A DNA stretch of 64,000 bases, taken from the IMG/VR virus record IMGVR_UViG_3300024999_000030, positions 62,001 to 126,000 of that record; one strand, given 5' to 3'. This document shows, piece by piece, positions 37,361 to 54,434 of this stretch. The position numbers and the translations under genes are program-made. Every line of letters starts with the position of its first letter. Position 1 is the first letter of the stretch. A model generated the notes under the pieces. The model worked only from the letters and a program-made list of their open reading frames with translations, ran no database searches and was not told the origin of the DNA.

Positions 37361-37372
37361 CTATTAATAAAA
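37361..37372 (+). promoter_or_regulatory. Candidate late promoter CTATTAATAAAA
   Basis: Intergenic, 2 nt after the upstream stop. The core ends 25 nt before the ATG at 37395. Confidence 0.55.
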
Positions 37373-40300: not shown

Positions 40301-40967
40301 GGGATACAATGCTGCAGCTTGTAATAACGGTATGTCCTATAATTTAATTTATTATTATACTGTTTTTACATATAACGATGCTGGACATTTTAGTTATGTT
40401 GACAGTTGCGCTCGCGCTGAATATGGTATTGGTAATGCTTTACCTCCTGGCCCAGTATGTCAACTTGCTATTGTTCCTCAAGCTAGTGGTAATCATGGCC
40501 CACTGTATGATAGCATCTCTTTATCGTGGGTAAATCCAGACGAATCTTCACTTTATGGAGTTAGAATTTACGTTTCTAAATATCGCTATGCTACAAACTT
40601 CGTAGAGCCATTCGATGCCAGCGATCCAATGTATATTTTATATGACTCCGTGTTTACCCCTAATTTAAATGCTATTGTTAATGTTGGTCCGGGTACAAGT
40701 TCAGCTATTATTGATGGGGTGGATAATTTTATAGCAGATCCCGACCATCCCGAACCCGATCCATATTATGGACACACTCAAGGTTATCGTGGTCTTTATA
40801 AGCTTTCTTCTGGCGGAGACGCTGTATTTACTGAATCCTCTACGTCTTCGGCGGTCCAATTTGAGAATGGAGTTATATATCATTATACTGTGTTCACATA
40901 TGATGTAAATGGCAATTACAATACCCCAACTTGTGTGGATAGGGGTCAAGTAAGCTATGCTTTATAA
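37395..40967 (+). CDS. Large virion structural protein with FN3-like domains (1190 aa)
   Basis: N-terminal KPTFYSGQNIYRDNL resembles the start of phage baseplate/fibre proteins. FN3-like strands LQWTPP, ISLSWVNP, YYYTVFTYND and YHYTVFTYDVNGNY. Confidence 0.6.
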   Translation: MSDTVLKPTFYSGQNIYRDNLQRIVSYDSSKRTALILSMFNNGVVNPTPYDLSAMRVVVDSYRNNSCYLDFQSSSQANNPITMSASGDPRILYAQKFYARSNNIQKVRLWMLVDVPPGTQFGEIFVEIRALVGSDCTSSNSCNCNSTLPTGASPLITEPASQVLARRVLDHNTINNSFPYIDVSFATEPLVSNLDDRSLMIPGQYYAIVIGRNYSTTGTLQIHGNFGNNLANLESYVTKFDPTTGLWTNYEGDSIAYQIFSNTVELLPGDGIVSGASINNPTYVEDSVGNTVRYHLGNLDLAHVKNIVSAGAVDQNGDGRNMVIARIREVEMEYQPNPRTGNPNATATAEVIEASITTERLWSEMSSTDQAAWLILAYVTDENTKTIKGLYEPPCDINAAAIAGNWSPGLINIEDARVFVPHAQALKYSLLDEPPARAISTSYNTNLIIPQADSTLALASVYINTESGAPSSVFKTGCVERNQLSVFDSAFGMTLTTPHMGKYLYYADDAGTLKKLNIIPPMVQSSIASADITSVPRTLNASTTIGACVNANMGLRVRLQWTPPSDPTSYRGLVIVRSTEDYPRSIDDGVIIAVSEKTFTTLDGRVYNFDPVGQANPCCNADNPEAGIIGKRRGLNSPLPELSMELVSAMSGTLNSLNDIVEYSIIPGTEFNINVSAFNLSSAILHPRFDVDIIYAGGSINLLRDYQAVNASTMYVSSSAINDIILPVTIPTTINNSSFPTGYTYLMIRVYDGFVSTHPQIGTLTLILKNETGESFNSGLTAIAAPLYENDQAVEDYIADSTTLLSVSAMSFLNISAIPFGRLSLKSQWMANYYNGTTNQIVPTDSINLTPLETVNGSEITMETLLDYVGANASVVPVSISSDTFRLQFIDIVGSSIAIGNSTTAAPSELFLSVVDETSEADIKPIVAYYNQDLYLVPRQQLVLNQECSCYVDAYSGTAYSAGFVGCERGYNAAACNNGMSYNLIYYYTVFTYNDAGHFSYVDSCARAEYGIGNALPPGPVCQLAIVPQASGNHGPLYDSISLSWVNPDESSLYGVRIYVSKYRYATNFVEPFDASDPMYILYDSVFTPNLNAIVNVGPGTSSAIIDGVDNFIADPDHPEPDPYYGHTQGYRGLYKLSSGGDAVFTESSTSSAVQFENGVIYHYTVFTYDVNGNYNTPTCVDRGQVSYAL

Positions 40968-40991: not shown

Positions 40992-42911
40992 ATGGACATT
41001 TTGTATAGCGCCTACGTTGGCTCGACGTCCTCATGGTCGATTGTCGCTAGAAATGTAATTTCCAATTTACTAACCCTTGGTAATAAAATTAGAGTATCTA
41101 GTACCAATGGATGGGAAAACGTACCATCTGAAATAGTATCATTGGCATCTACTCAATTAACCGATCCTGTTTTTCTTGGATATACGGTCCCACATCGTCT
41201 ACCTGCAATTCCTCAAAAATCTAGATTTCTTATTTATAATTACGAATCCTCTTTATTGCCATCTGGATGGGCCTCTATTATCAATCAACATGCTCAACTG
41301 GTATTTCCTGCCTCTGCATATGCAGCTAATATTTTACGCGACAATGGAGTTATATCTGATAAAATTGTGGTGTTACCATATGGCGTAGATACTACAGTTT
41401 TCTCTCCTAATGTTCCCCCAGCTATTCCGCGAGATAAATTCAATTTTTTATATTGTGCAATTCCACACGTTAGAAAGGGTATTGATTTACTATTGAGGGC
41501 CTATTATGAGGCCTTTGACGCTAATGATGCGGTCAGGCTTATTCTTAAAACTTCTAGGCGAACAGCTCCCCCTCAAAGCTTTGTTATAGATATTGATAAA
41601 ACAATAGCAAATGCTAAAGCCCTATTTCCAGGAAAAAATCTTCCAGAAGTAATGGTAATAGATCACACTTACCATAATCTATCGTCTCTCTATACTTCTG
41701 CTTCCGCCTATGTGGCACCCAGCCGATCAGAGGGCTTTGGTATGACTCCACTAGAAGCAATGGCCTGCGGGGTTCCAGTAATAGCCTCAGCCTATGGTGG
41801 CCATTTGGACTTTTTAAATAGTGATAATTCTTATCCAGTTTTAACCCGCGAAGTAGAAGCAACTCACCAGATGCAATATTGGCAATATCAAAGGGGTGCA
41901 AAAATTGGAGAACCAGATGTACAAGATTTAAGAGATAAAATGATCTACGTGTATTCTAACTATGAGAGCACTGTAGATGTTATTCGCAATGGATTAGCAA
42001 CTGTTAAAAAATACAATTGGAAAGATATTATTGTTGGTTTAGATGCTACGATGAGAGATAGTTTAGGTGTAGCTAAATCCAATAAGATTATCCCCCCAAT
42101 TAAAGGAAAGGTTGTTACCACTCTTTCCTCTGCTGCTAAAATAGCTATGACCCCAGGCAATGCCAATAAGATAGATAGGGCAAATGCTAGAAAAATATTA
42201 AAGGGCAGTGCGGCAAATAGTTTAACTACTCCTGGGCAACATTCCGTGGTTGTTGCGGCTAATTCCCTACCAGCTAAAGCAACAAAGCAAAAAATTCTAC
42301 AACAGGCAGTTGTATTAAATACCATGAACATCTCTCCAAAAACCCCATCCACCGCCCTACCAAAGCCCCCACTTCCCATCAATCAACCAACTACACAAGA
42401 CTCAACAGTTGTTTTATCTGCTCCTAGGGATTATATTTTCTTATATAATGGGATTACGAATGATAAATATTCATACATACGCGCTCTCTCTTCGGCAATT
42501 GGAAACACGCGCGGAATGTATGTTATTGATGGTGCCTCTTCCCCATCAAGTAGCGTTGGTGTCCTGCGCGAGGTTTTTAGTTCTAGATCTATAAAATATG
42601 CAGCTAAATGCAAGGCCGTGGCGGCAGAGGCTACTGTTGTTGTCCACCTAAGTGATTTACCTGTATGTGAATATTATTTGAGAGCTATTATGCCAGCATA
42701 TGAAATTTATTATATCACCGACTTACCTATTGATCGTGTAAATTTTGCTGCTTTACCTAGGGGTAAAACAACCGTGATATTAAATGCTCTTCCAGAAAAT
42801 CACAGCTACTCTAATCAAATAGAAACAGAGGGTTGTGTGTATGTAGATACTTTTGACGTGGACCCAGAGACGTTAGTCAATTTACAGTTCACGCAGGGGA
42901 TGATTCTATGA
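40992..42911 (+). CDS. Glycosyltransferase family 4 (GT-B) with P/T/K-rich linker and unknown C-terminal domain
   Basis: VLPYGVD, RKGIDLLLRAY and YVAPSRSEGFGMTPLEAMACGVPVIAS (the GT4 E-x7-E signature). Confidence 0.9.
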   Translation: MDILYSAYVGSTSSWSIVARNVISNLLTLGNKIRVSSTNGWENVPSEIVSLASTQLTDPVFLGYTVPHRLPAIPQKSRFLIYNYESSLLPSGWASIINQHAQLVFPASAYAANILRDNGVISDKIVVLPYGVDTTVFSPNVPPAIPRDKFNFLYCAIPHVRKGIDLLLRAYYEAFDANDAVRLILKTSRRTAPPQSFVIDIDKTIANAKALFPGKNLPEVMVIDHTYHNLSSLYTSASAYVAPSRSEGFGMTPLEAMACGVPVIASAYGGHLDFLNSDNSYPVLTREVEATHQMQYWQYQRGAKIGEPDVQDLRDKMIYVYSNYESTVDVIRNGLATVKKYNWKDIIVGLDATMRDSLGVAKSNKIIPPIKGKVVTTLSSAAKIAMTPGNANKIDRANARKILKGSAANSLTTPGQHSVVVAANSLPAKATKQKILQQAVVLNTMNISPKTPSTALPKPPLPINQPTTQDSTVVLSAPRDYIFLYNGITNDKYSYIRALSSAIGNTRGMYVIDGASSPSSSVGVLREVFSSRSIKYAAKCKAVAAEATVVVHLSDLPVCEYYLRAIMPAYEIYYITDLPIDRVNFAALPRGKTTVILNALPENHSYSNQIETEGCVYVDTFDVDPETLVNLQFTQGMIL

Positions 42912-43987
42912 CGGGCGTTAAATTTGTTGGTAATCCTGAGGATCACACGGGCTATGGACGCGCTTGTCTTAATACTATATTAGCTCTATTAAAGACTAAG
43001 ATTCCTATAACACTTTGCAATATTCGTTTTATACATAACACCAAACAGCCATTACCACCTGAAATCAAGGCACGAATTGATGTTAAGATTCCATATGACA
43101 CTGTTATAGTTCAATGTACTCCTAGTTCATCTGTTCAATTTTTTGAGCCCGGCAAGAAAAACATTATTTATTTTTTTTGGGAAACCGATTGTATTCCAAG
43201 CGTGTGGGTAGATGCCTGTAATAGTGCACAGGAAATTTGGGTGGCGTGTCAAAGTAATAAAGATGCGTGCATAAAAAGTGGAGTTACTACTCCAATACGT
43301 ATTGTGCCACAAGCAATGTCCCTACATACACATTCGCAACGTTTATATTTACCAGGAGTAACACCTAATACATATGTCTTTTATAACATTTTTCAGTGGA
43401 CCCCTAGAAAAAACCCAAGAGCTATGCTACATGCATATTGGAAAGCTTTTACAGCAATGGATGATGTGTTGTTAGTTGTTAAAACATATGGTTCATCAGA
43501 TAACAATCAAGATGTAGAACGAATTAAATCGGAAATTAAAAACTATAAAGCTGAATTACAACTATCCTCCTTTCCTAGATTATGGTTTATTCATAAAATT
43601 ATTAGTGATTTTACCATAGAGAGCCTTCATAATACTGCACACTGTTTTGTGTCTAGCTCTAAGGGTGAGGGATGGAATATGTCTCTCGCTACCTCGGCTA
43701 TGCTAAATAAACCAATTATTTCTTCTACCTATGGGGGACTGGTAGACTTTATGTCTCCAGAAGATTATTACTCTGTGGATAGTAGTAAGTGGGAATCAGT
43801 TTCTGGTATGAGTTGGATTCAATGGTACGAGAAAACTCAAAAATGGACAGATCCAAATATTGAGGATTTAAGTCTCAAAATGAGACAGGTTTTTGATGAA
43901 AACGTAAGACATGTTGAATATGAAATTGCAAAAAACATTACACTAGAGGCCGTAGGGGCTCAAATGCGAGAGCTATTATGGAAATAA
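42908..43987 (+). CDS. Glycosyltransferase family 4-like (GT-B)
   Basis: TGYGRA, FFWETD, WTPRKN and CFVSSSKGEGWNMSLATS; paralogous to the upstream GT4. Confidence 0.85.
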   Translation: MTGVKFVGNPEDHTGYGRACLNTILALLKTKIPITLCNIRFIHNTKQPLPPEIKARIDVKIPYDTVIVQCTPSSSVQFFEPGKKNIIYFFWETDCIPSVWVDACNSAQEIWVACQSNKDACIKSGVTTPIRIVPQAMSLHTHSQRLYLPGVTPNTYVFYNIFQWTPRKNPRAMLHAYWKAFTAMDDVLLVVKTYGSSDNNQDVERIKSEIKNYKAELQLSSFPRLWFIHKIISDFTIESLHNTAHCFVSSSKGEGWNMSLATSAMLNKPIISSTYGGLVDFMSPEDYYSVDSSKWESVSGMSWIQWYEKTQKWTDPNIEDLSLKMRQVFDENVRHVEYEIAKNITLEAVGAQMRELLWK

Positions 43988-44571
43988 CAACTTGTATTTT
44001 AGCTAAAAATGCCGCTAATTATATTGATTTGCCGATAAAATCAGCTAAACTTTTTTCATCTGAAGTAATAGTGGCCATAGATTCATTAAGTGATGATGAT
44101 ACTACCGCTAAGGTAGCCGCCTCCGACGTAATTTATTATTCATATGATTTTATTCATTTTGGAGACGCTAGAGATAAACTTATTGATTCTGCACATGGAA
44201 ATTGGATTTTTATGCTTGACGCCGATGAAGACTTGACCGCACAAGATTGCAGTAATATGAAAAAAGCAGCCGGGTGTTGTCCCGAGTGTGATTCGTTTTT
44301 ATTTCCAAGATATCAATGGTTAGATTGGGAAAGAACTAAATATGACCAACCTTATCCAGATTATCAATTGAGATTGTTTAAGCGGCTTCCACATATTAAA
44401 TATGGAAATCAACCAGTACATGAAGCACCTAAGGGTGTAAATAGAACTTCAGTAATACCATTTAATATTCATTTAAATCATTATAATAGAGTGTTTAGGC
44501 AGTGGATAGATTGGCATAACACTGCCATGTTTTATAATATCTTATCTGAAAAATATAAGGATGAAAAATGA
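43978..44571 (+). CDS. Glycosyltransferase family 2 (GT-A)
   Basis: EVIVAIDSLSDDDT, WIFMLDADE (DxD) and PDYQLRLF...VHE. Confidence 0.88.
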   Translation: MEITTCILAKNAANYIDLPIKSAKLFSSEVIVAIDSLSDDDTTAKVAASDVIYYSYDFIHFGDARDKLIDSAHGNWIFMLDADEDLTAQDCSNMKKAAGCCPECDSFLFPRYQWLDWERTKYDQPYPDYQLRLFKRLPHIKYGNQPVHEAPKGVNRTSVIPFNIHLNHYNRVFRQWIDWHNTAMFYNILSEKYKDEK

Positions 44572-45302
44572 TAACTAGTATAGTGAATTCACGTATGTTT
44601 CGGGAAGAATATAATCAATGGATTGATGAGTTTCAAACTATTATAGCTCCAACACCAGAAGAGCAATATAAATTGCAACATTTGAGGTATAGTGATTTTT
44701 TCTTTATACATCAAGCCATGAAGCCGACTGTTACAGATAAAATTTTAGAGCTTGGTGCGTGGCCCACATATGGGTTTCTCTATTTCGCTCAATTTGCCGC
44801 AGAAACAGTTATATCTGATAATTTACAATGGGATTCTGAGAGAGATTTAGCTGGTGTAGATAAATCTCCATCCCCATGGTTGAAAAATTGCGCTTCTTTC
44901 CCTAAAACCGTTGCTGAAAAAATAGACGCATGTAATATTCCATATGACAATTATTTTAATTTTATTTATTCTGTGTCTGTTATAGAACATGTTGTTGATG
45001 ATAATTTAGCTTTGAGGCAAATGTACAAGGCTTTAGCTCCTGGTGGAACAATGATATTAACCACTGAGGTTAATTTGTTTACATCAATGCCTTACCAGCC
45101 AGATGTATATTTTAGAGTATATAAGTTTAGTGAAATTATAGAGCAAATAAGGGCTGCAGGATTTATTGTTTCTAATAATATTGAAGGGGTGGACGCTGAA
45201 GTGGAAGCCATGATGTCCGGTGCCATTAATCATGAGACGGAGCTGAGGCAGCCATATAAACATTTCATGTCAGGCGGTGTAGTATGTCGCAAACCACTAT
45301 AG
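44568..45302 (+). CDS. Class I SAM-dependent methyltransferase
   Basis: ILELGA (motif I), FIYSVSVIEHV and LAPGGTMILT. Confidence 0.85.
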   Translation: MITSIVNSRMFREEYNQWIDEFQTIIAPTPEEQYKLQHLRYSDFFFIHQAMKPTVTDKILELGAWPTYGFLYFAQFAAETVISDNLQWDSERDLAGVDKSPSPWLKNCASFPKTVAEKIDACNIPYDNYFNFIYSVSVIEHVVDDNLALRQMYKALAPGGTMILTTEVNLFTSMPYQPDVYFRVYKFSEIIEQIRAAGFIVSNNIEGVDAEVEAMMSGAINHETELRQPYKHFMSGGVVCRKPL

Positions 45303-45958
45303 ATTATCATTTAAGCGCATTACCAGATTTAATGGAATATCTTGGAGAGACATATGTTCATAGGAATGGACAGGTGGAATTAAGAGATAAATGGTTATCT
45401 TGGCAAGGGGGAGTTTCAGAGTACTATAAAGACTGCGTGAATGATTCATATTTGTTTGATCTATCTCAATGGCACGCCTCTGGTACATTGACTGGTTGGG
45501 GTAATATAATTAAAGATCACGCTCATGGGGTGACATTGGATTTCGGTGGTGGTATAGGTACTTATTCTTTAATTATGGCCTCTTCTGATAAAACCAGTGA
45601 AGTTTGGTTTTATGATATTAATGAGGCTAATGAAAAATTTACCAAATATCGTATAGATAAACATAGTTTAGCTCATAAAGTGAAATATGGAATGCCCACA
45701 ACTCAAGTAGATACAATTGTGGCCATTGACGTTTTAGAGCATATGCCGGATAGAGTTTTAGCTGTTAAAGAGTGGGTTGATAAATTAAATCCTGGTGGTG
45801 TATTAATCTTAACTCACACCACCACAACGAGTGGCGGACAACATCCTATGCATCTTATGACTGATATCGAAATTCCAGTTGTAGCAGCCGCCCTTTCTGT
45901 GTCCTGCACCAAATTAGGCACTTTTTGGCCGCAGGTATGGGTGAAAAATGCACACTAA
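45284..45958 (+). CDS. Class I SAM-dependent methyltransferase
   Basis: TLDFGGGIG, DTIVAIDVLEHM and LNPGGVLIL. Confidence 0.88.
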   Translation: MSQTTIDYHLSALPDLMEYLGETYVHRNGQVELRDKWLSWQGGVSEYYKDCVNDSYLFDLSQWHASGTLTGWGNIIKDHAHGVTLDFGGGIGTYSLIMASSDKTSEVWFYDINEANEKFTKYRIDKHSLAHKVKYGMPTTQVDTIVAIDVLEHMPDRVLAVKEWVDKLNPGGVLILTHTTTTSGGQHPMHLMTDIEIPVVAAALSVSCTKLGTFWPQVWVKNAH

Positions 45959-46574
45959 CAACATACATACTGAAAAAGCATATATGGAAAGAGCACATGG
46001 GCCAGTTAGTCCAGTTTATTATACTGATGGTAGACCCATTACAGTCGGTTATAAATTATTAGATGAGTTATCTATACAGGGTGCCTTGGTTATAGATGTT
46101 GGCGCTTTTGCGGGATTTATAGGTAATTATTGTTTGCAGCGCGGAGCCCGAGTTACATTAATTGATATATTTAAGGGGGCGTTTCCCTCTTTTATGTTTA
46201 GCGTTCAGGGATCCAAAGAACAAATGCCATTTAGAGATAATTTTTTTGATTTTGCTGTATGTGGTGACACATTACATCATGGAGATTTAGATTCAACTCT
46301 ATTGGAAATTTATAGAATTCTTCGTCCAGGTGGCCAATTTATTTCTGTACGGGAGCCCTGTATAGCTTCCTCAGAAGACGAATGGACAGTATTACAAAAG
46401 GACTGCGGTTTAGTTGTTGCAGAGGGTATTTGTGAACGTAGGCCGAATCTAATTCAATATAAACGCGCTCTTACAGTGTTTCCTAAATTTAGTGTTTATA
46501 GTGGTGTGGACTTAACTCCAGCTAAAGATTTAAATTATGGAGATAAGGGCATTGTTATAAAGGCAATAAAATAG
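45948..46574 (+). CDS. Class I SAM-dependent methyltransferase
   Basis: VIDVGAFAG, MPFRDNFFDFAVCGDTLHH and ILRPGG. Confidence 0.88.
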   Translation: MHTNNIHTEKAYMERAHGPVSPVYYTDGRPITVGYKLLDELSIQGALVIDVGAFAGFIGNYCLQRGARVTLIDIFKGAFPSFMFSVQGSKEQMPFRDNFFDFAVCGDTLHHGDLDSTLLEIYRILRPGGQFISVREPCIASSEDEWTVLQKDCGLVVAEGICERRPNLIQYKRALTVFPKFSVYSGVDLTPAKDLNYGDKGIVIKAIK

Positions 46575-46585
46575 GACGGCGAAAA

Positions 46586-47275
46586 ATGAAACTTTCATTA
46601 TGTATGATGACATTAGATGGCGCTGATCGCATTGAAAAATGTTTACTTAATTTTGTTGGAATGGTCGATCAGATTGTTATATGTGTAGATGATAAAACAG
46701 TAGACAGCACAAGAGAGGTAGCGGCTAAAATTACCAATGAGGTATATGATTTTACTTTTGTACATTGGGGACAGGCAAAAGATAATATGTTACAATATCT
46801 CACTGGAGACTGGATACTTCTTATGGACGATGATGAAGATATGTCGATTGAAGATATTGGAATGCTCAAAACTGTAATAGAAACGGCTCCACTAGATGTG
46901 GATCTCTATGTAGTTCCCAGAAGACATTGGTTGGACTTGTCATGTACCAAATTAGATGAAACAAGGCCATACCCAGATTATCAATTAAGACTACATAGAA
47001 ATGTAGATTATATTAAGTGTGGAAATAAATTTGCCCATGCGTCCCCATCTGGGTACAATAAAAGCGAAATTATTCCATATGATATTCACATTAATCATTA
47101 TAATAAGGTGTATCACGACAGAGATTGGCATTTACGTCGTTATCAAATGTATGATGAATTGTTTCATAAATATGAGGGTATATCGTATTTGGAATTTATT
47201 AAAGAACACGTCAATCCGTTAGTACAAAAAATAGAAGAATGTCTTCCGACATTTAAACCAGAGGACAAAGAATGA
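46586..47275 (+). CDS. Glycosyltransferase family 2 (GT-A)
   Basis: LSLCMMTLD, CVDDKTVDST, WILLMDDDE and PYPDYQLRL; paralog of 43978..44571. Confidence 0.88.
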   Translation: MKLSLCMMTLDGADRIEKCLLNFVGMVDQIVICVDDKTVDSTREVAAKITNEVYDFTFVHWGQAKDNMLQYLTGDWILLMDDDEDMSIEDIGMLKTVIETAPLDVDLYVVPRRHWLDLSCTKLDETRPYPDYQLRLHRNVDYIKCGNKFAHASPSGYNKSEIIPYDIHINHYNKVYHDRDWHLRRYQMYDELFHKYEGISYLEFIKEHVNPLVQKIEECLPTFKPEDKE

Positions 47276-47868
47276 TATATAATGCTGATTTTTATTTAAA
47301 TAGAAATAAAATTACACGACCATCAGCTCTTGTGGTTTGTCCAATAGTTTTTGCTTTACTAGATGCCCCACAAACTGTGTGTGATTTTGGGTGTGGAGTA
47401 GGCACTTGGTTAAAAGTGTTTTCTGAGCTTGGAACGCAAGATGTTTTGGGATTAGAGGGAGATTGGCTAGATACTCAATATGTAGTGATTCCATTTGAAT
47501 CGTTGAAAATTACAGACTTATCTTCTACGGTGCAATTAAACAAAATATATGATTTAGCTGTATCTTTAGAGGTGGCTGAGCATATTGATGAAAAATATGC
47601 TGATGTGTTTGTGGATAATATAGCCCAAGCTTCAGATACTATATTGTTTTCTGCGGCAATTCCGGGTCAAGGTGGTGTCAATCATGTTAATGAGCAACCC
47701 CACCAATACTGGATAGATAAATTCGAAAACAGAGGATATGTTACTTTCGATTGCATTAGGTGGAGAATTGCCAATAATCCAAAAGTGTTTCCGTGGTATC
47801 AAAATAATATTTATATTTTTTCACGCAATCCTCGACATTCTATTAAACTCACGACCCTAAGTTCATAA
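47272..47868 (+). CDS. Class I SAM-dependent methyltransferase (surface-glycan-cluster type)
   Basis: VCDFGCGVGTWL, YDLAVSLEVAEHI and PGQGGVNHVNEQPHQYW. Confidence 0.9.
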   Translation: MIYNADFYLNRNKITRPSALVVCPIVFALLDAPQTVCDFGCGVGTWLKVFSELGTQDVLGLEGDWLDTQYVVIPFESLKITDLSSTVQLNKIYDLAVSLEVAEHIDEKYADVFVDNIAQASDTILFSAAIPGQGGVNHVNEQPHQYWIDKFENRGYVTFDCIRWRIANNPKVFPWYQNNIYIFSRNPRHSIKLTTLSS

Positions 47869-47869
47869 C

Positions 47870-47898
47870 TTGCAATTTATCTCGATAGGTATTATATT
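47870..47898 (+). promoter_or_regulatory. Sigma70-like promoter TTGCAA-17-TATATT
   Basis: Exact 17-bp spacer; upstream of the GGAGGT RBS of the radical SAM gene. Confidence 0.6.
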
Positions 47899-47916
47899 AT
47901 TACCTTGGAGGTTAAT

Positions 47917-48726
47917 ATGGTTCCACAGTTAATTCAAATAGAATCCTCCACAGCATGTAGTGCTGCATGTGATTTTTGCCCACATAGTTCACTTCAGAGA
48001 AAAATGGGTTCTATGACGGATGCTTTGTTTTTAAAAATTATTAACGATGCTAATAATATGGGAATAAAGCACATTCTTCTTTTTCTTAATGGTGAGCCTT
48101 TGATTTTTAATCGTTTTTTTTACTGGCTTGAAGAATTGCGTCAGCGGAATATGGTGACTACTATCTTTACTAATGCTTCACATTTAACTGAAGATAAAGC
48201 TCATCGTTTAATTTCTTACGCTGATGTAATTAGAGATATTTTTTTCAGCGTTGCTGGTATAAATAAGGAAACCTGTTTTAATCTTACTGGTTTAGATTTT
48301 GATACGGTGGTTTCTAATGTTAAATATTTTGTGAATCTGAATAATGGTTTAATCCCAATTGCCGCTCATATGCCACTATATAGCAAAACAGTAGCCTTTT
48401 CGAAGCAATGGAAATTATTTTGGTCAGATGTGGTTGGTAGGGCCGATTTAACCGATTATTATAATTTTGCTGGATTAGTCACGCCAGAGAAAAGTCAAAG
48501 AAAAAAAGCGTTTTGTGGTCGCCTTACTCATTTAACAGTGTTATATGATGGTAGGGTGTGTCTGTGCTGTATGGACCCAGAGGGACAAGTAATTTTAGGA
48601 GATCTAAACACTCAGTCTATCACGGAAGTTTATAATGGTGAAATAATGGAAAAATATCGTATGGCCCATCACCGTGGAGACTTTTCTTACCCGTTGTGTT
48701 GTAACTGCAATATGAATGAAGTATAA
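47917..48726 (+). CDS. Radical SAM protein with SPASM/twitch domain
   Basis: CSAACDFC (CxxxCxxC), GEPL, and C-terminal CGRL...YDGRVCLCCMD...CCNC. Start moved from the track's TTG at 47905 to the ATG at 47917 behind GGAGGT. Confidence 0.9.
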   Translation: MVPQLIQIESSTACSAACDFCPHSSLQRKMGSMTDALFLKIINDANNMGIKHILLFLNGEPLIFNRFFYWLEELRQRNMVTTIFTNASHLTEDKAHRLISYADVIRDIFFSVAGINKETCFNLTGLDFDTVVSNVKYFVNLNNGLIPIAAHMPLYSKTVAFSKQWKLFWSDVVGRADLTDYYNFAGLVTPEKSQRKKAFCGRLTHLTVLYDGRVCLCCMDPEGQVILGDLNTQSITEVYNGEIMEKYRMAHHRGDFSYPLCCNCNMNEV

Positions 48727-48727
48727 T
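48699..48727 (+). promoter_or_regulatory. Sigma70-like promoter TTGTAA-17-TATAAT upstream of gmd
   Basis: Consensus -10 with 17-bp spacing, overlapping the end of the radical SAM gene. Confidence 0.45.
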
Positions 48728-48763
48728 ATTGTGGTTATCTAACTTAAGAGGAAAGGAATTGAT

Positions 48764-49738
48764 ATGAAAAAGGCATTAGTTACTGGTATTTATGGACAAG
48801 ATGGTGGTTTTTTAGCAAAACAGCTACTTCAAGAGAACTATGAAGTGTGGGGTGTAAAGCGCCGCTCAGCCTCATCTATTCCATGGCGGCTGGAAGCACT
48901 TGGTATCTTATCTCACCCAAATCTCCATATTATTGAGGGAGATGTAACAGATCCAATTTCCATGTTAGACTGTGTAAAACGCTCTCAACCAGATGAAGTT
49001 TATAATACGGCAGCCATGAGTCATGTGGGAACCTCATTTAAACAGCCTCTTGCCACTGCCCAAATTGATGGGTTGGGAGTTCTAAATATATTAGAGGCTA
49101 TTCGTACATTAGCTCCTGAAGCTAGATTTGTACAGTGTTCCACCTCGGAGCTTTATGGTAATTTACCCCCGGAGCAACAATCTCTAGGCGTATATCATCC
49201 ACGTAGTCCATATGGGGTGGCAAAGCTTTTTGGTTTTTGGACTACAGTTAATTATCGTGAAACATATAATATTTTTGCTTGCAATTCCATTTGCTATAAT
49301 CACGAATCAGCTTTACGCGGCGAAGACTTTGTTACTAGAAAAATTACACTTGGCTTAGCTGATATTGTAGCTGGTAAAAGCAAGGTGATTAAGTTGGGAA
49401 ATATTGATGCTCGTCGAGATTGGCAACATGCTAAAGATGCGTGTCGAGCAATGATTATGATGGCCCGCGCGGATGTAGCGGATGATTTTGTTGTTGCTAC
49501 TGGAGAATCTCATTCTGTACGAGAGTTTATTCAATTGGCGGTGAAGAAAGCTGGCTTAGGAGATGATTGTGAACGTTTTATTGAAATCGATCCACAGTTT
49601 TATCGTCCTGCTGAGGTCCCAGATTTGAAAGGGAATCCAGATAAAATTATGAAAACTTTGGGATGGAAACCTATTACATCTTACGAACAGTTAGTCGAGG
49701 AAATGGTTAATTATGATGTCTTTGGGAAGAAGCCTTGA
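48764..49738 (+). CDS. gmd: GDP-mannose 4,6-dehydratase
   Basis: KKALVTGIYGQDG, AAMSHVGTSF, STSELYG, PRSPYGVAK (YxxxK), NHESALRGEDFVTRKIT, LGNIDARRDW and YRPAEV. Confidence 0.95.
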   Translation: MKKALVTGIYGQDGGFLAKQLLQENYEVWGVKRRSASSIPWRLEALGILSHPNLHIIEGDVTDPISMLDCVKRSQPDEVYNTAAMSHVGTSFKQPLATAQIDGLGVLNILEAIRTLAPEARFVQCSTSELYGNLPPEQQSLGVYHPRSPYGVAKLFGFWTTVNYRETYNIFACNSICYNHESALRGEDFVTRKITLGLADIVAGKSKVIKLGNIDARRDWQHAKDACRAMIMMARADVADDFVVATGESHSVREFIQLAVKKAGLGDDCERFIEIDPQFYRPAEVPDLKGNPDKIMKTLGWKPITSYEQLVEEMVNYDVFGKKP

Positions 49739-49799: not shown

Positions 49800-51104
49800 A
49801 TGAGTGATAACGAATTTAAGATAGAGGCTACTGGAAATAGTGGCATTCATATCGAGAGTACTGGCGGAGTTAAAATTGAAGCAAAAGCTGGAACTCCGGT
49901 AGAGGTGAGAGGAGTAAAAGTGGGAATGACAGGTGAGCTTGCGATTCGTTTCGGTGTCATCGGTGCCGGGCAGGGAGGCTCTAGAATAGCCGAGGTGTTT
50001 GGTGCGCTGGGTTACCCATCTTGTGCCATTAACACGGCCAAACAAGATCTAAAATATATTAAACTGCCTGAAGACCGTAAACTTTGTATGGAATATGGTC
50101 TTGGCGGCGCAGGACGAGACATTCAATTAGGTGCCGAAGCCTTTACTGCTCATCGAGAATCTGTGCAGGCCCTTATTGATCGCACTTTTTCTGATGATGT
50201 GGACTATGCATTAGTGTGTGTTGGTGGTGGTGGTGGTACGGGATCAGGTGTAGCCGAACAACTTATTACGTTGTTACATTCTTATAATATGCCGGTTGGT
50301 ATGATTTACACTTTACCTCAATCTAATGAAGACGCTTTAACCCACGCTAATGCCGTTAAAGTGTTGGATAAGCTCAGTAAATTGGTTAAGGAAAAAATAC
50401 TCACTACTCTTATCGTGGTAGATAACGCTAAGATTGAAGCCATTTATCCTTCTTTATCTACTGTGGCTTTTTGGCAGAAAGCAAATGGTGACTTAGTTAA
50501 TATTCTCCATCAATTCAATCGTCTTACTGCACAGCCATCTCGTTTTGTATCTCTTGATCCCATGGACTTTGCTAAAATTATAACTGAGGGAGGGTGTACT
50601 GTATATGGAGCAGCTAGACTCTCAGAATATAAAGATGCAGAAAGCCTTGCGCAGACGGTAATTAACAGTGTTAAATCCGGCCTATTAGCCTCTGAATTTA
50701 CTCTATCTGAAGCCACAATGGGTGGATTAATTGTTACTGGTTCATTTGATATGCTTTCAACTGTTCCACAGGAAGATATCAATTATGCTTTATATAATCT
50801 TACTTCTATAGTTGGCCATGCTGGTCTTTATAGAGGAATTTATGATTTAGATTCTACGGATGCTGGACATGGCCTTGTGGTTTATACTATGTTGAGTGGT
50901 CTTGGTGTGCCCCATCGTAGAGTTGAAGCCCTTATCCAACGTGGCGAAGAGGGCGCTCAAGCCCTTGAGATTAAAAAGAATGATCATGCTAAAATGAACG
51001 TTATTGATTCTGATTCTTCCAGCGCCGATAATGACCGTCTTAAAAACATGCAAGCTAAACATGGTCCATTGGGTAAACTTTTGGGAAATAGAAAGAAGCC
51101 TTAA
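49800..51104 (+). CDS. Tubulin/FtsZ-superfamily GTPase
   Basis: GVIGAGQGGSRI (T1), NTAKQDL, GGAGRDIQLG, GGGGGTGSG (signature loop), VVDN and LDPMDF (T7-like loop). AAGGAG RBS. Confidence 0.92.
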   Translation: MSDNEFKIEATGNSGIHIESTGGVKIEAKAGTPVEVRGVKVGMTGELAIRFGVIGAGQGGSRIAEVFGALGYPSCAINTAKQDLKYIKLPEDRKLCMEYGLGGAGRDIQLGAEAFTAHRESVQALIDRTFSDDVDYALVCVGGGGGTGSGVAEQLITLLHSYNMPVGMIYTLPQSNEDALTHANAVKVLDKLSKLVKEKILTTLIVVDNAKIEAIYPSLSTVAFWQKANGDLVNILHQFNRLTAQPSRFVSLDPMDFAKIITEGGCTVYGAARLSEYKDAESLAQTVINSVKSGLLASEFTLSEATMGGLIVTGSFDMLSTVPQEDINYALYNLTSIVGHAGLYRGIYDLDSTDAGHGLVVYTMLSGLGVPHRRVEALIQRGEEGAQALEIKKNDHAKMNVIDSDSSSADNDRLKNMQAKHGPLGKLLGNRKKP

Positions 51105-51113
51105 GGAGAGAAG

Positions 51114-51278
51114 ATGAACTTTATAAAAGGTTTAGGGTCTTTGGGTTTATGGAATTTCATATTTTTCCAGTGGTTTTTTACTAGATTGGCTTTTAAATAT
51201 GATTTAAATACTAATGCTTATCTGGGATGGAAAATTCTTTTCCCGGTAGTTCCATTGACTCGATGGATTTTTAATTAA
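51114..51278 (+). CDS. 54-aa aromatic/hydrophobic small protein (below track cutoff)
   Basis: AAGGAG RBS. MNFIKGLGSLGLWNFIFFQWFFTRLAFKYDLNTNAYLGWKILFPVVPLTRWIFN; ends before the terminator. Confidence 0.7.
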   Translation: MNFIKGLGSLGLWNFIFFQWFFTRLAFKYDLNTNAYLGWKILFPVVPLTRWIFN

Positions 51279-51298: not shown

Positions 51299-51322
51299 GG
51301 CGCCCGCAAGGGCGCCTTTTTT
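51299..51322 (+). terminator. Rho-independent terminator
   Basis: GGCGCCC-GCAA-GGGCGCC followed by T6 (7-bp stem, GNRA loop). Confidence 0.92.
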
Positions 51323-51334
51323 GTTTCTTTTAGT

Positions 51335-51344
51335 CTATTAATGA
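51335..51344 (+). promoter_or_regulatory. Candidate late promoter variant CTATTAATGA
   Basis: Directly after the terminator. The context ctattaat(g)ataattgtta resembles 63572. About 30 nt before the ATG at 51374. Confidence 0.4.
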
Positions 51345-51373
51345 TAATTGTTATATGGATTGAGGAAAATATA

Positions 51374-51858
51374 ATGACAAAAATAATTTTTCTTTTTGGA
51401 AAAGAGGCTAAAAAATGTACTAAATGTCAACAAGATAAGTTATTATCAGAATTTCCAAAAAACAAAAGGGAAAAGAATAAAATATTATTAAGAAAGAAAG
51501 CACAAATACGCAGAAAAGCTAGAGCCCTACAAGACCCAGAATATAGATTGCTTCTTTGCTGTAGGAGCCGAATTAGCGATGCTATTAGAAGAAATAGGGG
51601 TTTTAGTGGAAAAAATCAAACCACTAAACAGCTAATAGGATGTTCATTATTACAACTTAGGCAACATATTGAAAGTAAGTGGCAACCGGGAATGACTTGG
51701 GAAAATTATGGTATCCGAGGGTGGCACATAGATCATATTAAACCATGTGCTTCGTTTATTCTAACGGACGAAAAACAATTACAACAATGTTTTTTCATTA
51801 TACAAATCTTCAGCCCTTGTGGTGGAGAGATAATTTAACGAAAGGAGCGAAAACATGA
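51374..51858 (+). pseudogene. Degenerate/frameshifted HNH endonuclease-like gene
   Basis: Has KKCTKC, LIGCS...HIE and MTWENYG..GWHIDHIKPCASF. After a T6 run (51790-51795) the -1 frame continues HYTNLQPLWWRDNLTKG and stops at TGA 51856-58, overlapping the amidase ATG. Confidence 0.8.
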
Positions 51859-52496
51859 AATTTAATACTGATTATTCCGCAACAACCACGGATTATTATC
51901 TGGTGGAAACAGTAAAACAAGGCATAACACTTCATTATACTGCTGGCAGCACTGCTTCTGGAGCCATTAGCACGTTATGTCAACAAGATATGGTATGTGT
52001 GCCTTTTGTGGTGGATAAAGATGGCACTGTCTATCAACTTTTTAATCCAAAATATTATGCTTTTCATTTGGGGATCCGTGGAGCAGCAGAAGGTTATAAA
52101 AAAGGACATTTTGATAAAAAATTTCTAAGTGTGGAAATCGTCAATGAGGGACCATTAAAAAAAGTTGGTTCAGATTATTTATGGTGGCCTAAAAATTGGG
52201 GAGCTAAATATACAGGAAAAGTAGTTAATTATTCTTTTCGTGGTTTTGATTATCATGCGGCATTTCCAGAGGTTCAAATCCAGGCTGTTTGTGAATTAAT
52301 AAAACATCTTTGTACTGAGTTTAATATTTCTAAAAGTTTAGTGCCAAAAGATAAACGTGAATTATTAGATTTAGATTATATGGATACCTTTGAGGGGATA
52401 TGTTCGCATGTTAATTTCAGGTGGGACAAATGGGACATTCCAGGTGAACCAGTCTTTCCGTGGGATAGGCTACAAAAGTATTTAGAAGACAAATGA
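51855..52496 (+). CDS. N-acetylmuramoyl-L-alanine amidase (Amidase_2), probable endolysin
   Basis: ITLHYTAG, FVVDKDGTVYQ, SVEIVNEG and ICSHVNFRWDKWD (zinc ligands H/H/D plus catalytic E). Confidence 0.88.
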   Translation: MKFNTDYSATTTDYYLVETVKQGITLHYTAGSTASGAISTLCQQDMVCVPFVVDKDGTVYQLFNPKYYAFHLGIRGAAEGYKKGHFDKKFLSVEIVNEGPLKKVGSDYLWWPKNWGAKYTGKVVNYSFRGFDYHAAFPEVQIQAVCELIKHLCTEFNISKSLVPKDKRELLDLDYMDTFEGICSHVNFRWDKWDIPGEPVFPWDRLQKYLEDK

Positions 52497-54430: not shown

Positions 54431-54434
54431 ATAC

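What the first reader, a model, noticed from the sequence alone, without database searches (positions are those of the whole stretch)
40992..49738. Ten-gene glycan factory attached to the tail module: probable virion glycosylation (methylated deoxysugar shield)
Seen: 2 GT4, 2 GT2, 4 small-molecule SAM methyltransferases, a radical SAM/SPASM enzyme and Gmd. The first eight overlap or nearly abut, start 24 nt after the last structural gene, and no terminator is visible. No signal peptides or TM anchors are evident. Known: Gmd makes the precursor of GDP-fucose, D-rhamnose and perosamine. Chloroviruses encode Gmd and build methylated capsid glycans, and some mycobacteriophages glycosylate virion proteins with their own GTs. 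Inference: this phage builds a complex O-methylated glycan on its particle. Alternatives are host-surface conversion or DNA hypermodification.
Basis: partly seen in the sequence, partly recalled or inferred. Interest (0 to 1): 0.85.

Follow-up and report, generated by a model that had tools for sequence, protein, structure and literature searches.

The report
Swappable sugar-building island, giant groundwater phage
A 333-kb groundwater phage carries ten intact, soluble sugar-handling enzymes right after its last tail-region gene; close relatives keep three core genes but swap the rest, so the phage probably coats something, most likely its own particle, with a variable methylated sugar chain, though the target is unproven.

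Summary
Window 40992-49738 encodes ten same-strand, overlapping or abutting genes: two paralogous GT4 glycosyltransferases, two paralogous GT2s, four SAM methyltransferases, a small radical-SAM enzyme and Gmd. None has a membrane segment, and there is no terminator before 51299.

New findings:
- The ten genes are not one evolutionary unit. In seven distinct island layouts of this jumbo-phage family, GT4-1 and GT4-2 always sit 24-30 nt after the last large structural gene. In one layout an extra gene intervenes. A Gmd ortholog sits just before a TubZ-like tubulin gene in all four other layouts whose right edge was read. Between them, 0 to at least 10 genes are exchanged wholesale, even between phages whose flanking proteins are 85% identical.
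- A colinear cassette (GT4, Gmd, GT2, MT, radical SAM) occurs in an unrelated phage. A GT2-TPR, radical-SAM and MT trio lies inside the tail-fibre module of a third phage.
- The GT2s are closest to the protein/peptide glycosyltransferases GmaR and SunS. GT4-2 matches only chlorovirus B736L among solved structures. The radical-SAM enzyme is BtrN-like, so probably sugar-modifying.

Virion glycosylation is the best-supported reading (about 0.45) but unproven. Host-envelope remodelling and DNA glycosylation remain open.

The parts
37361..37372 (+). Conserved intergenic motif CTATTAATAAAA, a candidate promoter or regulatory site, just upstream of the 1190-aa gene that heads the array
   Evidence: Three exact copies in the window, two of them in gaps before structural genes. 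With one mismatch there are 7 matches against 2.1 expected. The same motif lies in the same gap in relatives L004 and L009. Its function is inferred.
37395..40967 (+). Last large gene of the structural block (1190 aa, no family hit). It is the left anchor of the island and a candidate acceptor.
   Evidence: No Pfam, PHROG or GenBank-phage hit. An ortholog of 1025-1252 aa, split into 135 + 1043 aa in L009, lies upstream of GT4-1 in all nine contigs read (truncated). Immediate adjacency (24-30 nt) holds in the contigs whose junction was read. In L003/L004 a 344-aa gene intervenes, and L020's gene call is 5'-truncated. The upstream neighbours are Laminin_G_3, Kelch/Ig and baseplate proteins.
40992..42911 (+). 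GT4-1. Three parts: a GT-B glycosyltransferase domain (residues 1-360), a basic disordered linker (about 361-510, net charge +15), and a small variable C-terminal domain (about 511-639).
   Evidence: Pfam, PHROG and NCBIfam hits. EX7E motif at 247-255. Alignment A1. The GT domain is 78-80% identical to close relatives, against 21-44% for the linker and C-terminal domain. The C-terminal domain has no family. The AF2 model was poor (pLDDT 45).
42908..43987 (+). GT4-2, a paralog of GT4-1 and a core gene that evolves fast
   Evidence: phrog_2170 at 1e-14. Its only PDB relative is chlorovirus NY-2A B736L (8.8e-8 for the single sequence, 1.6e-10 for the profile). It is 42-52% identical in relatives whose flanking genes are 76-87% identical.
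43978..44571 (+). GT2-a, a 197-aa GT-A catalytic domain only
   Evidence: Pfam hit just below the cutoff. phrog_13126. Best NCBIfam and PDB hits are SunS (3.6e-7 and 6.7e-6), then GmaR. DxD at residue 81.
44568..45302 (+). SAM methyltransferase MT1
   Evidence: Methyltransf_11/23. phrog_22502. 29% identical to the methyltransferase of the L013 cassette.
45284..45958 (+). SAM methyltransferase MT2
   Evidence: Methyltransf_23/12/11. Weak PDB hit to a D-glucose O-methyltransferase (0.0044).
45948..46574 (+). SAM methyltransferase MT3
   Evidence: Methyltransf_11 at 6.4e-14.
46586..47275 (+). GT2-b, a 229-aa GT-A catalytic domain and paralog of GT2-a
   Evidence: Pfam 1.6e-9. Its only PDB hit is GmaR, the Listeria flagellin O-GlcNAc transferase, at 8.9e-11. 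Its nearest cellular relatives are GT2 domains of large GT2+TPR proteins.
47272..47868 (+). SAM methyltransferase MT4
   Evidence: Methyltransf_23 at 5.4e-9. GCGVG motif.
47917..48726 (+). BtrN-like radical-SAM enzyme with one auxiliary-cluster (twitch/abridged SPASM) domain. The start is revised from 47905.
   Evidence: Pfam. BtrN is the only PDB sequence hit. The AF2 model has pLDDT 96.5. The top Foldseek hit is BtrN (4e-15, TM 0.75), followed by SuiB, DesII and BlsE. Conserved Cys residues are listed. The family has 110 metagenomic members and none in GenBank phages.
48764..49738 (+). GDP-mannose 4,6-dehydratase (Gmd), a core gene at the right edge of the island
   Evidence: PF16363 at 1.1e-108. 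TIGR01472 scores 346 bits, below the 415-bit equivalog cutoff. Orthologs 60-67% identical sit just before the tubulin gene in L010, L018 and L020.
49800..51104 (+). TubZ-like tubulin. It is the conserved right boundary of the island and apparently co-transcribed, but is not itself a glycan gene.
   Evidence: Pfam Tubulin plus TubZ-like_C. It holds the same position in relatives.
51299..51316 (+). First strong intrinsic terminator downstream of the array
   Evidence: Seven G-C pairs followed by a T run. It is the only such site in 36-53 kb.

Best explanation
This is a soluble, cytoplasmic glycan-assembly line encoded by a roughly 333-kb groundwater jumbo myovirus.

Shown:
- The locus has a conserved core of GT4-1, GT4-2 and Gmd.
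- An insertion slot between GT4-2 and Gmd holds a different cassette in each relative. Here it holds GT2-a, three methyltransferases, GT2-b, a fourth methyltransferase and a BtrN-like radical-SAM enzyme.

Inferred mechanism:
1. Gmd converts host GDP-mannose to GDP-4-keto-6-deoxymannose. This is reduced to a GDP-6-deoxyhexose (D-rhamnose or L-fucose), either by Gmd itself, as in chlorovirus PBCV-1, or by a host reductase.
2. The two GT4s lay down a base glycan from GDP-sugars on a phage-made acceptor.
3. The two GT2s extend the glycan.
4. The four methyltransferases O-methylate it.
5. The radical-SAM enzyme oxidises or rearranges one sugar.

The acceptor is most likely a virion protein of the tail or fibre apparatus, modified in the cytoplasm before assembly. 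The result would be a strain-variable sugar coat on the particle.
For: Enzyme identities and intact motifs.

All ten proteins lack membrane segments, and the window has no flippase, polymerase, initiating phosphoglycosyltransferase or exporter.

Synteny. In seven distinct island layouts from nine contigs, the order is: large structural gene, GT4-1, GT4-2, a variable island of 0 to at least 10 genes, then the tubulin gene. Where both are read, a Gmd ortholog precedes tubulin. In L003/L004 a 344-aa gene intervenes before GT4-1. L009's flanking proteins are 85-87% identical to the window's, yet its insert is entirely different.

Independent lineages. L013 carries a colinear homologous cassette: GT4 32%, Gmd 50%, GT2 33%, MT 29% and radical SAM 53% identical. 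It is flanked upstream by a partly read 679-aa protein (weak PTL_trimer hit) and downstream by lysis genes. L014 has MT, GT2+TPR and radical-SAM genes directly after a collagen-like tail-fibre gene (phrog_5073, 2.5e-82), with virion genes following.

Acceptor hints. The best solved relatives of GT2-a and GT2-b are SunS and GmaR, both protein/peptide glycosyltransferases. Seven of nine sampled nearest cellular relatives are GT2+TPR proteins. GT4-2's only solved relative is chlorovirus B736L, which binds GDP-mannose (PMC9614988).

The radical-SAM enzyme is closest in sequence, size and fold to BtrN. DesII and BlsE, both sugar-acting, are also among the top hits.

Precedents: mycobacteriophage virion glycosylation by an O-methyltransferase plus three GTs (PMC11600133, PMC12363180), and chlorovirus and mimivirus virion glycans (PMC9614988).

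No C5-MT, TET/5mYOX or thymidylate-synthase-like gene was found in the window or 10 kb either side.
Against: - No acceptor protein or sequon was identified. The window's structural proteins have no collagen-like or Ser/Thr-rich tracts.
- The site is a junction between the structural and replication modules, a typical place for accessory genes, so adjacency alone is weak evidence.
- In L015 and L016 the GT/radical-SAM pair lies among non-structural genes. In L016 it is a few genes from 7-deazaguanine (QueD/QueE/FolE) genes.
- The GT2 similarity to GmaR and SunS covers mainly the donor-binding half, and the window's GT2s lack TPR domains.
- The acceptor of B736L is unknown (PMC9614988).
- GT4-1's bacterial relatives are large multidomain GT4s, an architecture I recall from polysaccharide synthesis (one search lists only architectures).
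- The GT4-1 linker is strongly basic, which could fit nucleic-acid binding.
- Sigma70-like promoter matches precede the radical-SAM, Gmd and tubulin genes, and an identical form precedes a helicase gene. This hints at non-late expression of part of the locus.
- No 4-reductase for the Gmd product is encoded.
Confidence: 0.45

Rival explanations
1. Host-envelope remodelling. The soluble GTs, methyltransferases and Gmd act at the cytoplasmic face on the host's undecaprenyl-linked O-antigen, capsule or LPS-core intermediates. Host transporters export these, changing the infected cell's surface to block superinfection or stop progeny re-adsorbing.
For: Published reading of polymorphic GT and NDP-sugar clusters in jumbo and cyanophages (PMC7824862, PMC12801897). 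Gmd is common in cyanomyoviruses and huge phages. GT4-1's cellular relatives are large multidomain GT4/GT2 proteins, an architecture I recall from polysaccharide synthesis (one search gives architectures only). From memory, the Gmd, GT4 and methyl-cap logic matches the ABC-transporter-dependent D-rhamnan and mannan O-antigen pathways. Possible early-type promoters before the radical-SAM and Gmd genes.
Against: No membrane protein, initiating transferase, flippase, polymerase or exporter among the ten genes or their neighbours. The core is welded to the structural block in every relative. Related cassettes lie inside the tail-fibre module in L014 and next to a partly read tail-like protein in L013. 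The GT2s group with protein-acting GT2s, not with lipid-carrier GT2s such as GtrB or DPMS-type enzymes.
Confidence: 0.2
2. DNA hypermodification. The GTs attach a methylated oligosaccharide to hydroxymethyl-pyrimidines, or another modified base, in phage DNA to defeat host nucleases.
For: Phage GT-A and GT-B enzymes do build mono- to tri-saccharides on 5hmC, sometimes in neighbourhoods that contain structural genes (bioRxiv 10.1101/2023.12.21.572611). The GT4-1 linker is basic, net +15. L016 has a GT8/radical-SAM pair near 7-deazaguanine genes. dUTPase and a faint dNMP-kinase hit lie 10 kb downstream.
Against: No C5-cytosine methyltransferase, 5mYOX/TET or thymidylate-synthase-like hydroxymethylase in the 64-kb window or 10 kb either side. 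The four methyltransferases are small-molecule class-I types, not DNA methylases. Neither GT4 hits T4 beta-GT among solved structures. Four GTs, four methyltransferases and a radical-SAM enzyme exceed any DNA glycan described in that work.
Confidence: 0.15
3. Another soluble target. The glycan may be built on a non-virion phage or host protein, or on a small molecule (a glycoside-type metabolite). The position next to tail genes would then only reflect a plasticity hotspot.
For: The island content turns over like accessory genes at a junction. BtrN, DesII and BlsE all act in small-molecule sugar pathways. L015 carries the GT2, radical-SAM and methyltransferase trio among unrelated genes.
Against: The cluster has no aglycone-forming or scaffold enzymes. 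The core GT4 pair and Gmd are vertically conserved, not sporadic. Composition is fully phage-like: island GC is 0.33-0.41 against 0.37 +/- 0.03 for the rest.
Confidence: 0.15

Closest known systems
Mycobacteriophage virion glycosylation (Che8, Corndog, Myrna; Freeman et al. 2023, as cited in PMC11600133 and PMC12363180)
   Same: A tailed phage encodes its own soluble GTs plus an O-methyltransferase. Cluster O phages have one O-methyltransferase and three tandem GTs. The glycans decorate virion proteins.
   Different: This locus is much larger, with four GTs, four methyltransferases, a radical-SAM enzyme and Gmd. It makes its own nucleotide-sugar. It has a conserved core plus a swappable slot. 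No mycobacteriophage appeared among the tblastn hits of GT4-1. The target here is unproven.
Chlorovirus capsid glycosylation machinery (PBCV-1 GMD A118R, GT/MT protein A064R, MT A061L; NY-2A B736L)
   Same: A virus-encoded Gmd draws on host GDP-mannose. Soluble GTs and methyltransferases build methylated rhamnose- and fucose-containing glycans. GT4-2's only solved relative is B736L, which binds GDP-mannose (PMC9614988).
   Different: Chloroviruses are eukaryotic viruses whose genes are scattered rather than arrayed. Their glycans are N-linked to the capsid protein. They have no radical-SAM enzyme. B736L's own acceptor is unknown.
Mimivirus clade-specific fibril glycosylation clusters
   Same: These are compact clusters of sugar-nucleotide enzymes and GTs whose content differs between related viruses. 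They sit beside a gene for a fibril component (PMC9614988).
   Different: The sugars are UDP-based and the enzyme families differ. The host is eukaryotic. Here variation occurs between phages whose flanking proteins are 85% identical.
LPS-like GT and NDP-sugar clusters of large cyanomyoviruses and other jumbo phages (P-SSM2, S-SCSM1, S-SCSM2R)
   Same: Gmd and many GTs in a large myovirus; polymorphic between relatives; function unresolved (PMC7824862).
   Different: Those clusters are usually read as host-surface modifiers and are not anchored to the tail block. Their Gmd is only about 46% identical. They lack the GT-A/radical-SAM/methyltransferase cassette.
Bacterial cytoplasmic protein-glycosylation enzymes GmaR (Listeria flagellin O-GlcNAc transferase) and SunS (sublancin S-glycosyltransferase), and flagellin glycosylation islands
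   Same: These are soluble GT2 catalytic domains acting on folded or peptide substrates before export. They are the best solved relatives of both window GT2s. From memory, strain-variable islands lie next to the filament gene.
   Different: The window's GT2s lack the TPR domains of GmaR and SunS. The similarity lies mostly in the donor-binding half.
BtrN, 2-deoxy-scyllo-inosamine dehydrogenase (twitch radical-SAM enzyme)
   Same: Same size, a CX3CX2C motif plus one auxiliary cluster, and the top match by both sequence and fold.
   Different: Only 18% identical. The family here is a distinct, uncharacterised, metagenome-only family tied to GT-A genes in phages.

Membership tests
Phage virion-glycosylation systems (mycobacteriophage type) | Phage-encoded soluble glycosyltransferases, with an O-methyltransferase in some | tested here: met
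   Four GTs and four methyltransferases, none with a membrane segment
Phage virion-glycosylation systems (mycobacteriophage type) | Glycan covalently attached to virion proteins | not testable with these tools
   Needs glycoproteomics of particles or co-expressed proteins
Phage virion-glycosylation systems (mycobacteriophage type) | Sequence relatedness of the GTs to Che8 gp110 / Corndog gp38-type GTs | tested here: not met
   tblastn of GT4-1 against 50,697 phage records hit Streptomyces, Rhodococcus and Arthrobacter phage GTs at about 25% identity. No Mycobacterium phage appears among the organism groups listed. Only GT4-1 was tested.
Chlorovirus-type autonomous virion glycosylation | Virus-encoded GDP-mannose 4,6-dehydratase feeding virus-encoded GTs | tested here: met
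   Gmd at 48764-49738. GT4-2 is related to the GDP-mannose-binding B736L.
Chlorovirus-type autonomous virion glycosylation | Glycan found on the major capsid protein | not testable with these tools
   No particle or protein data. The capsid gene lies outside the window.
GDP-mannose 4,6-dehydratase (Gmd) | Full-length match to the family profile above the curated threshold | tested here: inconclusive
   Pfam PF16363 scores 364 bits, far above its cutoff. The NCBIfam equivalog TIGR01472 scores 346 bits, below its 415-bit cutoff.
GDP-mannose 4,6-dehydratase (Gmd) | SDR cofactor motif GxxGxxG and catalytic YxxxK | tested here: met
   GIYGQDG at residue 8 and YGVAK at residue 150
Twitch/SPASM radical-SAM enzymes, BtrN-like | CX3CX2C radical-SAM cluster plus C-terminal Cys ligands for an auxiliary cluster | tested here: met
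   C14/C18/C21 together with C200, C217, C218, C261 and C264 are invariant in 47 homologs
Twitch/SPASM radical-SAM enzymes, BtrN-like | Fold match to BtrN | tested here: met
   Foldseek top hit 4m7t, E 4e-15, TM 0.69/0.75, from a model with pLDDT 96.5
Twitch/SPASM radical-SAM enzymes, BtrN-like | Oxidises a secondary alcohol of a sugar or cyclitol | not testable with these tools
   Needs an enzyme assay
Phage DNA glycan-hypermodification gene clusters | GT next to a C5-cytosine methyltransferase plus 5mYOX/TET, or next to a thymidylate-synthase-like hydroxymethylase | tested here: not met
   None found in the 64-kb window or 10 kb either side. The other roughly 250 kb of the genome was not examined.
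Phage DNA glycan-hypermodification gene clusters | GT-B enzyme resembling T4 beta-glucosyltransferase | tested here: not met
   Sequence searches of solved structures gave MshA, sucrose-phosphate synthase-like proteins and B736L, not T4 BGT. No fold comparison was possible because the GT4-1 model was poor.
Seroconversion / envelope-polysaccharide modules (Gtr, Wzx/Wzy, ABC-exported) | Membrane-embedded transferase, flippase, polymerase or exporter in the module | tested here: not met
   No hydrophobic segment in any of the ten proteins. Neighbouring genes are structural, tubulin, lysis and replication genes.
GmaR/SunS-type protein-glycosylating GT2 | GT-A catalytic domain closest to GmaR/SunS | tested here: met
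   GT2-b against GmaR at 8.9e-11, its only hit. GT2-a against SunS at 6.7e-6 and GmaR at 1.2e-4.
GmaR/SunS-type protein-glycosylating GT2 | Fused TPR substrate-binding domain | tested here: not met
   The window GT2s are 197 and 229 aa, catalytic domain only. TPR is present in the L014 homolog, as faint precomputed Pfam hits only, and in 7 of 9 nearest cellular relatives.

The most novel reading that the evidence does not exclude
Jumbo phages of this family carry a 'glyco-serotype' locus. It has a fixed anchor (GT4-GT4 ... Gmd) welded to the tail block and a slot where whole sugar-tailoring cassettes are exchanged between co-occurring phages. This would give each strain a different methylated, radical-SAM-modified deoxysugar coat on its fibres, making it a phage counterpart of bacterial O-antigen or flagellin glycosylation islands. 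Within it, the GT-A, BtrN-like radical-SAM and methyltransferase trio would be a mobile, previously undescribed sugar-tailoring cassette shared by unrelated phages.
Probability: 0.3. Interest if true: 0.8.

Novelty: new variant of a known kind. Interest (0 to 1): 0.55.

Why it matters
In the literature I read, self-glycosylation of phage particles has been shown only for a few mycobacteriophages. Large GT clusters in jumbo phages are usually assumed to alter the host surface.

This locus offers a clean comparative system. It has a fixed three-gene core beside the tail genes and a slot that differs even between phages with 85% identical neighbouring proteins. It also contains a recurring, uncharacterised radical-SAM/GT/methyltransferase cassette.

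If the target is the virion, surface glycan variation would be a general axis of phage diversity. It would bear on host recognition, on adsorption to non-host material, on grazing and on immune recognition of therapeutic phages. It would also yield a new sugar-modifying radical-SAM activity. If the target is DNA or the host envelope, the locus still defines a new cassette-exchange hotspot.

Tried and rejected
- Megablast of 36-56 kb against 50,697 GenBank phages gave no match. tblastn of the 1190-aa protein and of the radical-SAM enzyme against the same set also gave none.
- The AF2 model of GT4-1 from a 10-sequence alignment was poor (pLDDT 45), so no fold search was run on it. Its C-terminal domain stays unassigned; Pfam at E <= 1 found nothing.
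- A shared sigma70-like motif (TTGACT-N17-TATATTAT) is not enriched window-wide: 4 matches against 2.1 expected. Only its placement in gaps is suggestive.
- A search for collagen-like or Ser/Thr-rich acceptor tracts in the window's structural proteins found none.
- Composition gives no sign of recent foreign origin for the island.
- The word-indexed search with GT2-b found only three relatives. The exhaustive search was needed.
- The metagenome scan added only one further relative, of a layout already seen.
- The 'moraphage' jumbo lineage (PMC12619734) was considered as the source and set aside, since no tubulin is reported there. The phage was seen in many assemblies, the one read being a groundwater metagenome (PRJNA268031).
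- PF20706 'GT4-conflict' was considered as a functional clue and rejected. It co-hits nearly all GT4 homologs and scores below Glycos_transf_1.
- The full text of Freeman et al. 2023 is not held, so it is cited only through papers that describe it.

Full report
**What is there**

The window is part of a roughly 332.7-kb phage contig. It was recovered repeatedly from many assemblies; the one read is a groundwater metagenome (IMG/VR UViG_3300024999_000030; ENA ERZ909590, PRJNA268031).

Upstream of the finding lies a long + strand block of structural genes. It includes an M23-peptidase protein, a tail-tube-initiator-like protein, gp25-like and gp6-like baseplate proteins, and Kelch/Ig, PKD and Laminin_G_3 proteins. 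It ends with a 1190-aa protein that has no family (37395-40967).

The ten ORFs follow after a 24-nt gap with a ribosome-binding site. The first eight overlap by 4-19 nt or are 11 nt apart. Pfam, PHROGs and NCBIfam agree on the classes:
- GT4-1 (639 aa)
- GT4-2 (359 aa)
- GT2-a (197 aa)
- MT1, MT2 and MT3
- GT2-b (229 aa)
- MT4
- a radical-SAM/SPASM enzyme
- Gmd

Two assignments fall below Pfam's own cutoffs (GT4-2 and GT2-a). Both are secured by paralogy: GT4-1/GT4-2 at 3e-22 and GT2-a/GT2-b at 1.5e-42. PHROG and PDB hits agree. Catalytic motifs are intact. None of the ten has a membrane segment.

**Transcription context**

The only strong intrinsic terminator in 36-53 kb is at 51299-51316. 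It lies after the next gene, a TubZ-like tubulin, and after a 54-aa hydrophobic ORF.

A 12-nt motif, CTATTAATAAAA, sits in the gap before the 1190-aa gene. It holds the same position in two relatives. The 1190-aa gene, the island and the tubulin gene may therefore form one transcription unit.

However, sigma70-like matches (TTGnnn-17-TATAnT) occupy each of the three gaps before the radical-SAM, Gmd and tubulin genes. The same form precedes a helicase gene. The motif is not enriched window-wide, so this is only a hint that part of the locus is also expressed with non-structural genes. The radical-SAM gene probably starts at ATG 47917, behind a GGAGG.

**Comparative anatomy (the main new result)**

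Homologs of GT4-1 were found on eight other contigs of the same phage family. Their contexts were read.

In every case the gene order is the same:
1. a large structural gene of 1025-1252 aa (split into 135 + 1043 aa in L009; one contig starts inside the gene)
2. a 24-30 nt gap (in L003/L004 a 344-aa gene intervenes)
3. GT4-1
4. GT4-2
5. a variable island
6. the TubZ-like tubulin gene, where the right edge was read

The island content differs by contig:

| Contig | Genes between GT4-2 and tubulin |
|---|---|
| L003/L004 | none |
| L010/L018 | Gmd only |
| L020 | GT, MT24, GT4, MT, Gmd |
| Window | the seven genes described above, then Gmd |
| 344-kb ENA contig | ten genes, partly similar to the window's |
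| L009 | at least ten mostly different genes |
| ERZ1426829 / ERZ1426827 contigs | two UDP-galactopyranose mutases, epimerases, an HldE-like kinase/nucleotidyltransferase and others |

Gmd orthologs are 60-67% identical. That is as conserved as tubulin (60%) and more conserved than the structural protein (41-44%). They sit directly before tubulin in L010, L018 and L020. A 323-aa Gmd-family gene holds the same place on the 344-kb contig, by precomputed Pfam only, since no DNA was available.

So the core is GT4-1 + GT4-2 + Gmd, and the slot between GT4-2 and Gmd is exchanged wholesale. L009's flanking proteins are 85-87% identical to the window's, yet nothing in its slot matches at 1e-6 apart from a weak N-terminal hit of the radical-SAM enzyme (25% identity, 1e-7).

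Rates also differ within the core. The GT domain of GT4-1 evolves like the flanks (78-80% identical). Its basic linker and C-terminal domain are 21-44% identical, and GT4-2 is 42-52% identical. Composition is fully phage-like.

**The cassette outside this family**

The radical-SAM enzyme belongs to a family of about 110 proteins of roughly 260-290 aa. All are metagenomic, and none is in GenBank phages at 1e-8. Four contexts were read:
- L013, a 68-kb phage contig. It holds a colinear homologous set: GT4 32%, Gmd 50%, GT2 33%, MT 29% and radical SAM 53% identical, then an MT24. A partly read 679-aa protein (weak PTL_trimer hit) lies at the upstream end, and Trypsin/XhlA lysis genes lie downstream.
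- L014, a 167-kb circular phage. MT24, GT2+TPR and radical-SAM genes lie directly after a collagen-like tail-fibre gene (phrog_5073, 2.5e-82) and before more virion genes.
- L015. GT2, radical-SAM and MT24 genes among non-structural genes.
- L016. A GT8/radical-SAM pair a few genes from QueD/QueE/FolE.

A GT-A gene immediately upstream of the radical-SAM gene, or separated from it only by a methyltransferase as in the window and L013, is therefore the constant feature. Association with tail genes is frequent but not universal.

**What the enzymes resemble**

- GT2-b's only solved relative is GmaR, the Listeria flagellin O-GlcNAc transferase (8.9e-11). GT2-a's best relatives are SunS, a peptide S-glycosyltransferase, and GmaR.
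- The exhaustive search found 5086 relatives of GT2-b. The nearest are GT2 domains inside large proteins, and 7 of 9 sampled also carry TPR repeats.
- GT4-2's only solved relative, by single sequence and by profile, is chlorovirus NY-2A B736L. B736L binds GDP-mannose best, and its acceptor is unknown (PMC9614988).
- GT4-1 gives only generic GT4 hits.
- The radical-SAM enzyme gave a model with pLDDT 96.5. Its top structural match is BtrN, followed by SuiB, DesII, BlsE and anSME. It is BtrN-sized, has no extra peptide-recognition domain, and has five conserved auxiliary Cys. This favours a sugar or cyclitol substrate.
- The methyltransferases are small-molecule class-I types, with one weak hit to a glucose O-methyltransferase.
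- No 4-reductase for the Gmd product is encoded. PBCV-1 GMD can itself make GDP-D-rhamnose (PMC9614988), or a host enzyme could supply the step. This point is inference.

**Interpretation**

Shown: an intact, soluble glycan-assembly line with a conserved GDP-sugar core and a swappable tailoring cassette.

Inferred: the product is an O-methylated oligosaccharide containing a 6-deoxyhexose.

The acceptor is not shown. A virion (tail or fibre) protein is the best-supported candidate, for five reasons:
- The core is invariably anchored to the structural block.
- In L014 a related cassette lies inside the tail-fibre module, and in L013 it lies beside a partly read protein with a weak PTL_trimer hit.
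- The GT2s have affinities with protein-acting enzymes, and GT4-2 with a chlorovirus GT.
- Lipid-carrier and export functions are absent.
- Base-hydroxymethylating genes are absent across 84 kb.

Precedents exist in mycobacteriophages, chloroviruses and mimiviruses (PMC11600133, PMC12363180, PMC9614988).

Against this reading:
- The site is a module junction.
- L015 and L016 carry the pair away from structural genes.
- Sigma70-like promoter matches precede part of the locus.
- The GT4-1 linker is strongly basic.
- Bacterial relatives of GT4-1 have a multidomain GT4 architecture that, from memory, is typical of polysaccharide synthesis.
- No acceptor motif was found.

I put virion glycosylation at about 0.45, host-envelope remodelling at about 0.2 (the published default for jumbo-phage GT clusters, PMC7824862), DNA glycan hypermodification at about 0.15 (bioRxiv 10.1101/2023.12.21.572611), and other soluble targets at about 0.15.

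**Novelty**

Phage-encoded Gmd and GT clusters are known (PMC12801897, PMC7824862), and so is virion glycosylation. Three things are new here:
- the architecture, with a fixed core beside the tail genes and a cassette slot that differs between near-identical phages;
- the size and chemistry of the cassette;
- a recurrent, uncharacterised module of a GT-A and a BtrN-like radical-SAM enzyme, usually with a methyltransferase, shared by unrelated phages.

I file it as a new variant of a known kind, with moderate interest. The phage is uncultured, but the key question can be tested by co-expression.

Noticed in passing
window 49800-51104: TubZ/PhuZ-like tubulin (Pfam Tubulin plus TubZ-like_C) directly after the island. 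It is conserved at 60-84% identity in relatives and apparently shares the island's transcription unit.
   Followed up: partly
window 51114-51278 and 51299-51316: An unannotated 54-aa hydrophobic ORF after the tubulin gene, followed by the only strong intrinsic terminator in 17 kb.
   Followed up: no
window 19422-19433, 37361-37372, 53082-53093; L004 5034-5045; L009 6421-6432; L011 17250-17261: The exact 12-mer CTATTAATAAAA recurs, mostly in short intergenic gaps, and is positionally conserved in relatives. It is a candidate phage promoter or regulatory motif.
   Followed up: partly
window 54402-54432: A perfect TTGACT-17-TATATTAT promoter-like site fills the gap before the UvsW/ResIII-type helicase gene. 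Similar sites precede the radical-SAM, Gmd and tubulin genes.
   Followed up: partly
window 59678-62647; L011 19555 onward: The ribonucleotide reductase carries an intein with a LAGLIDADG endonuclease. The GyrB gene 10 kb downstream of the window also carries an intein. The DnaB-like helicase (58022-59521) has a zinc-ribbon insert.
   Followed up: no
L004 8827-9973: In this relative a 344-aa gene is inserted between the large structural gene and GT4-1. It is followed by a 23-residue duplicate of that structural protein's C-terminus, which looks like a recombination scar at the island's left anchor.
   Followed up: no
L009 6454-9976: The ortholog of the 1190-aa protein is split into 135-aa and 1043-aa ORFs that overlap by 17 nt. 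This is a frameshift, programmed or an assembly error.
   Followed up: no
window 29321-31207 and 33902-35470: Two structural proteins end in nearly the same C-terminal sequence and hit the same region of the relative. One has Kelch repeats plus an Ig-like domain, the other PKD/Ig-like domains. They may be paralogous fibre or decoration proteins with a shared C-terminal module.
   Followed up: no
window 51341-52496: The endonuclease-VII-like gene has no tblastn counterpart in any relative read. The Amidase_2 gene has none in L004, but 35-37% identical counterparts sit after tubulin in L010, L018 and L020. This is a second small variable spot just right of the tubulin gene.
   Followed up: no
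L016 7322-14429: In an unrelated 101-kb phage-like contig, a GT8/radical-SAM pair lies near QueD, a QueE-like radical-SAM gene, GTP cyclohydrolase I and an Mtd_N (diversity-generating retroelement target) gene.
   Followed up: no
window 42072-42521 (GT4-1 residues about 361-510): A long disordered, strongly basic linker (net charge +15) with two invariant arginines (R396, R400) in an otherwise hypervariable stretch. Its partner is unknown.
   Followed up: partly
L011 15578-17239: The phage encodes a GroEL-type chaperonin (Cpn60_TCP1), and a dUTPase, about 3-5 kb beyond the window's right end.
   Followed up: no
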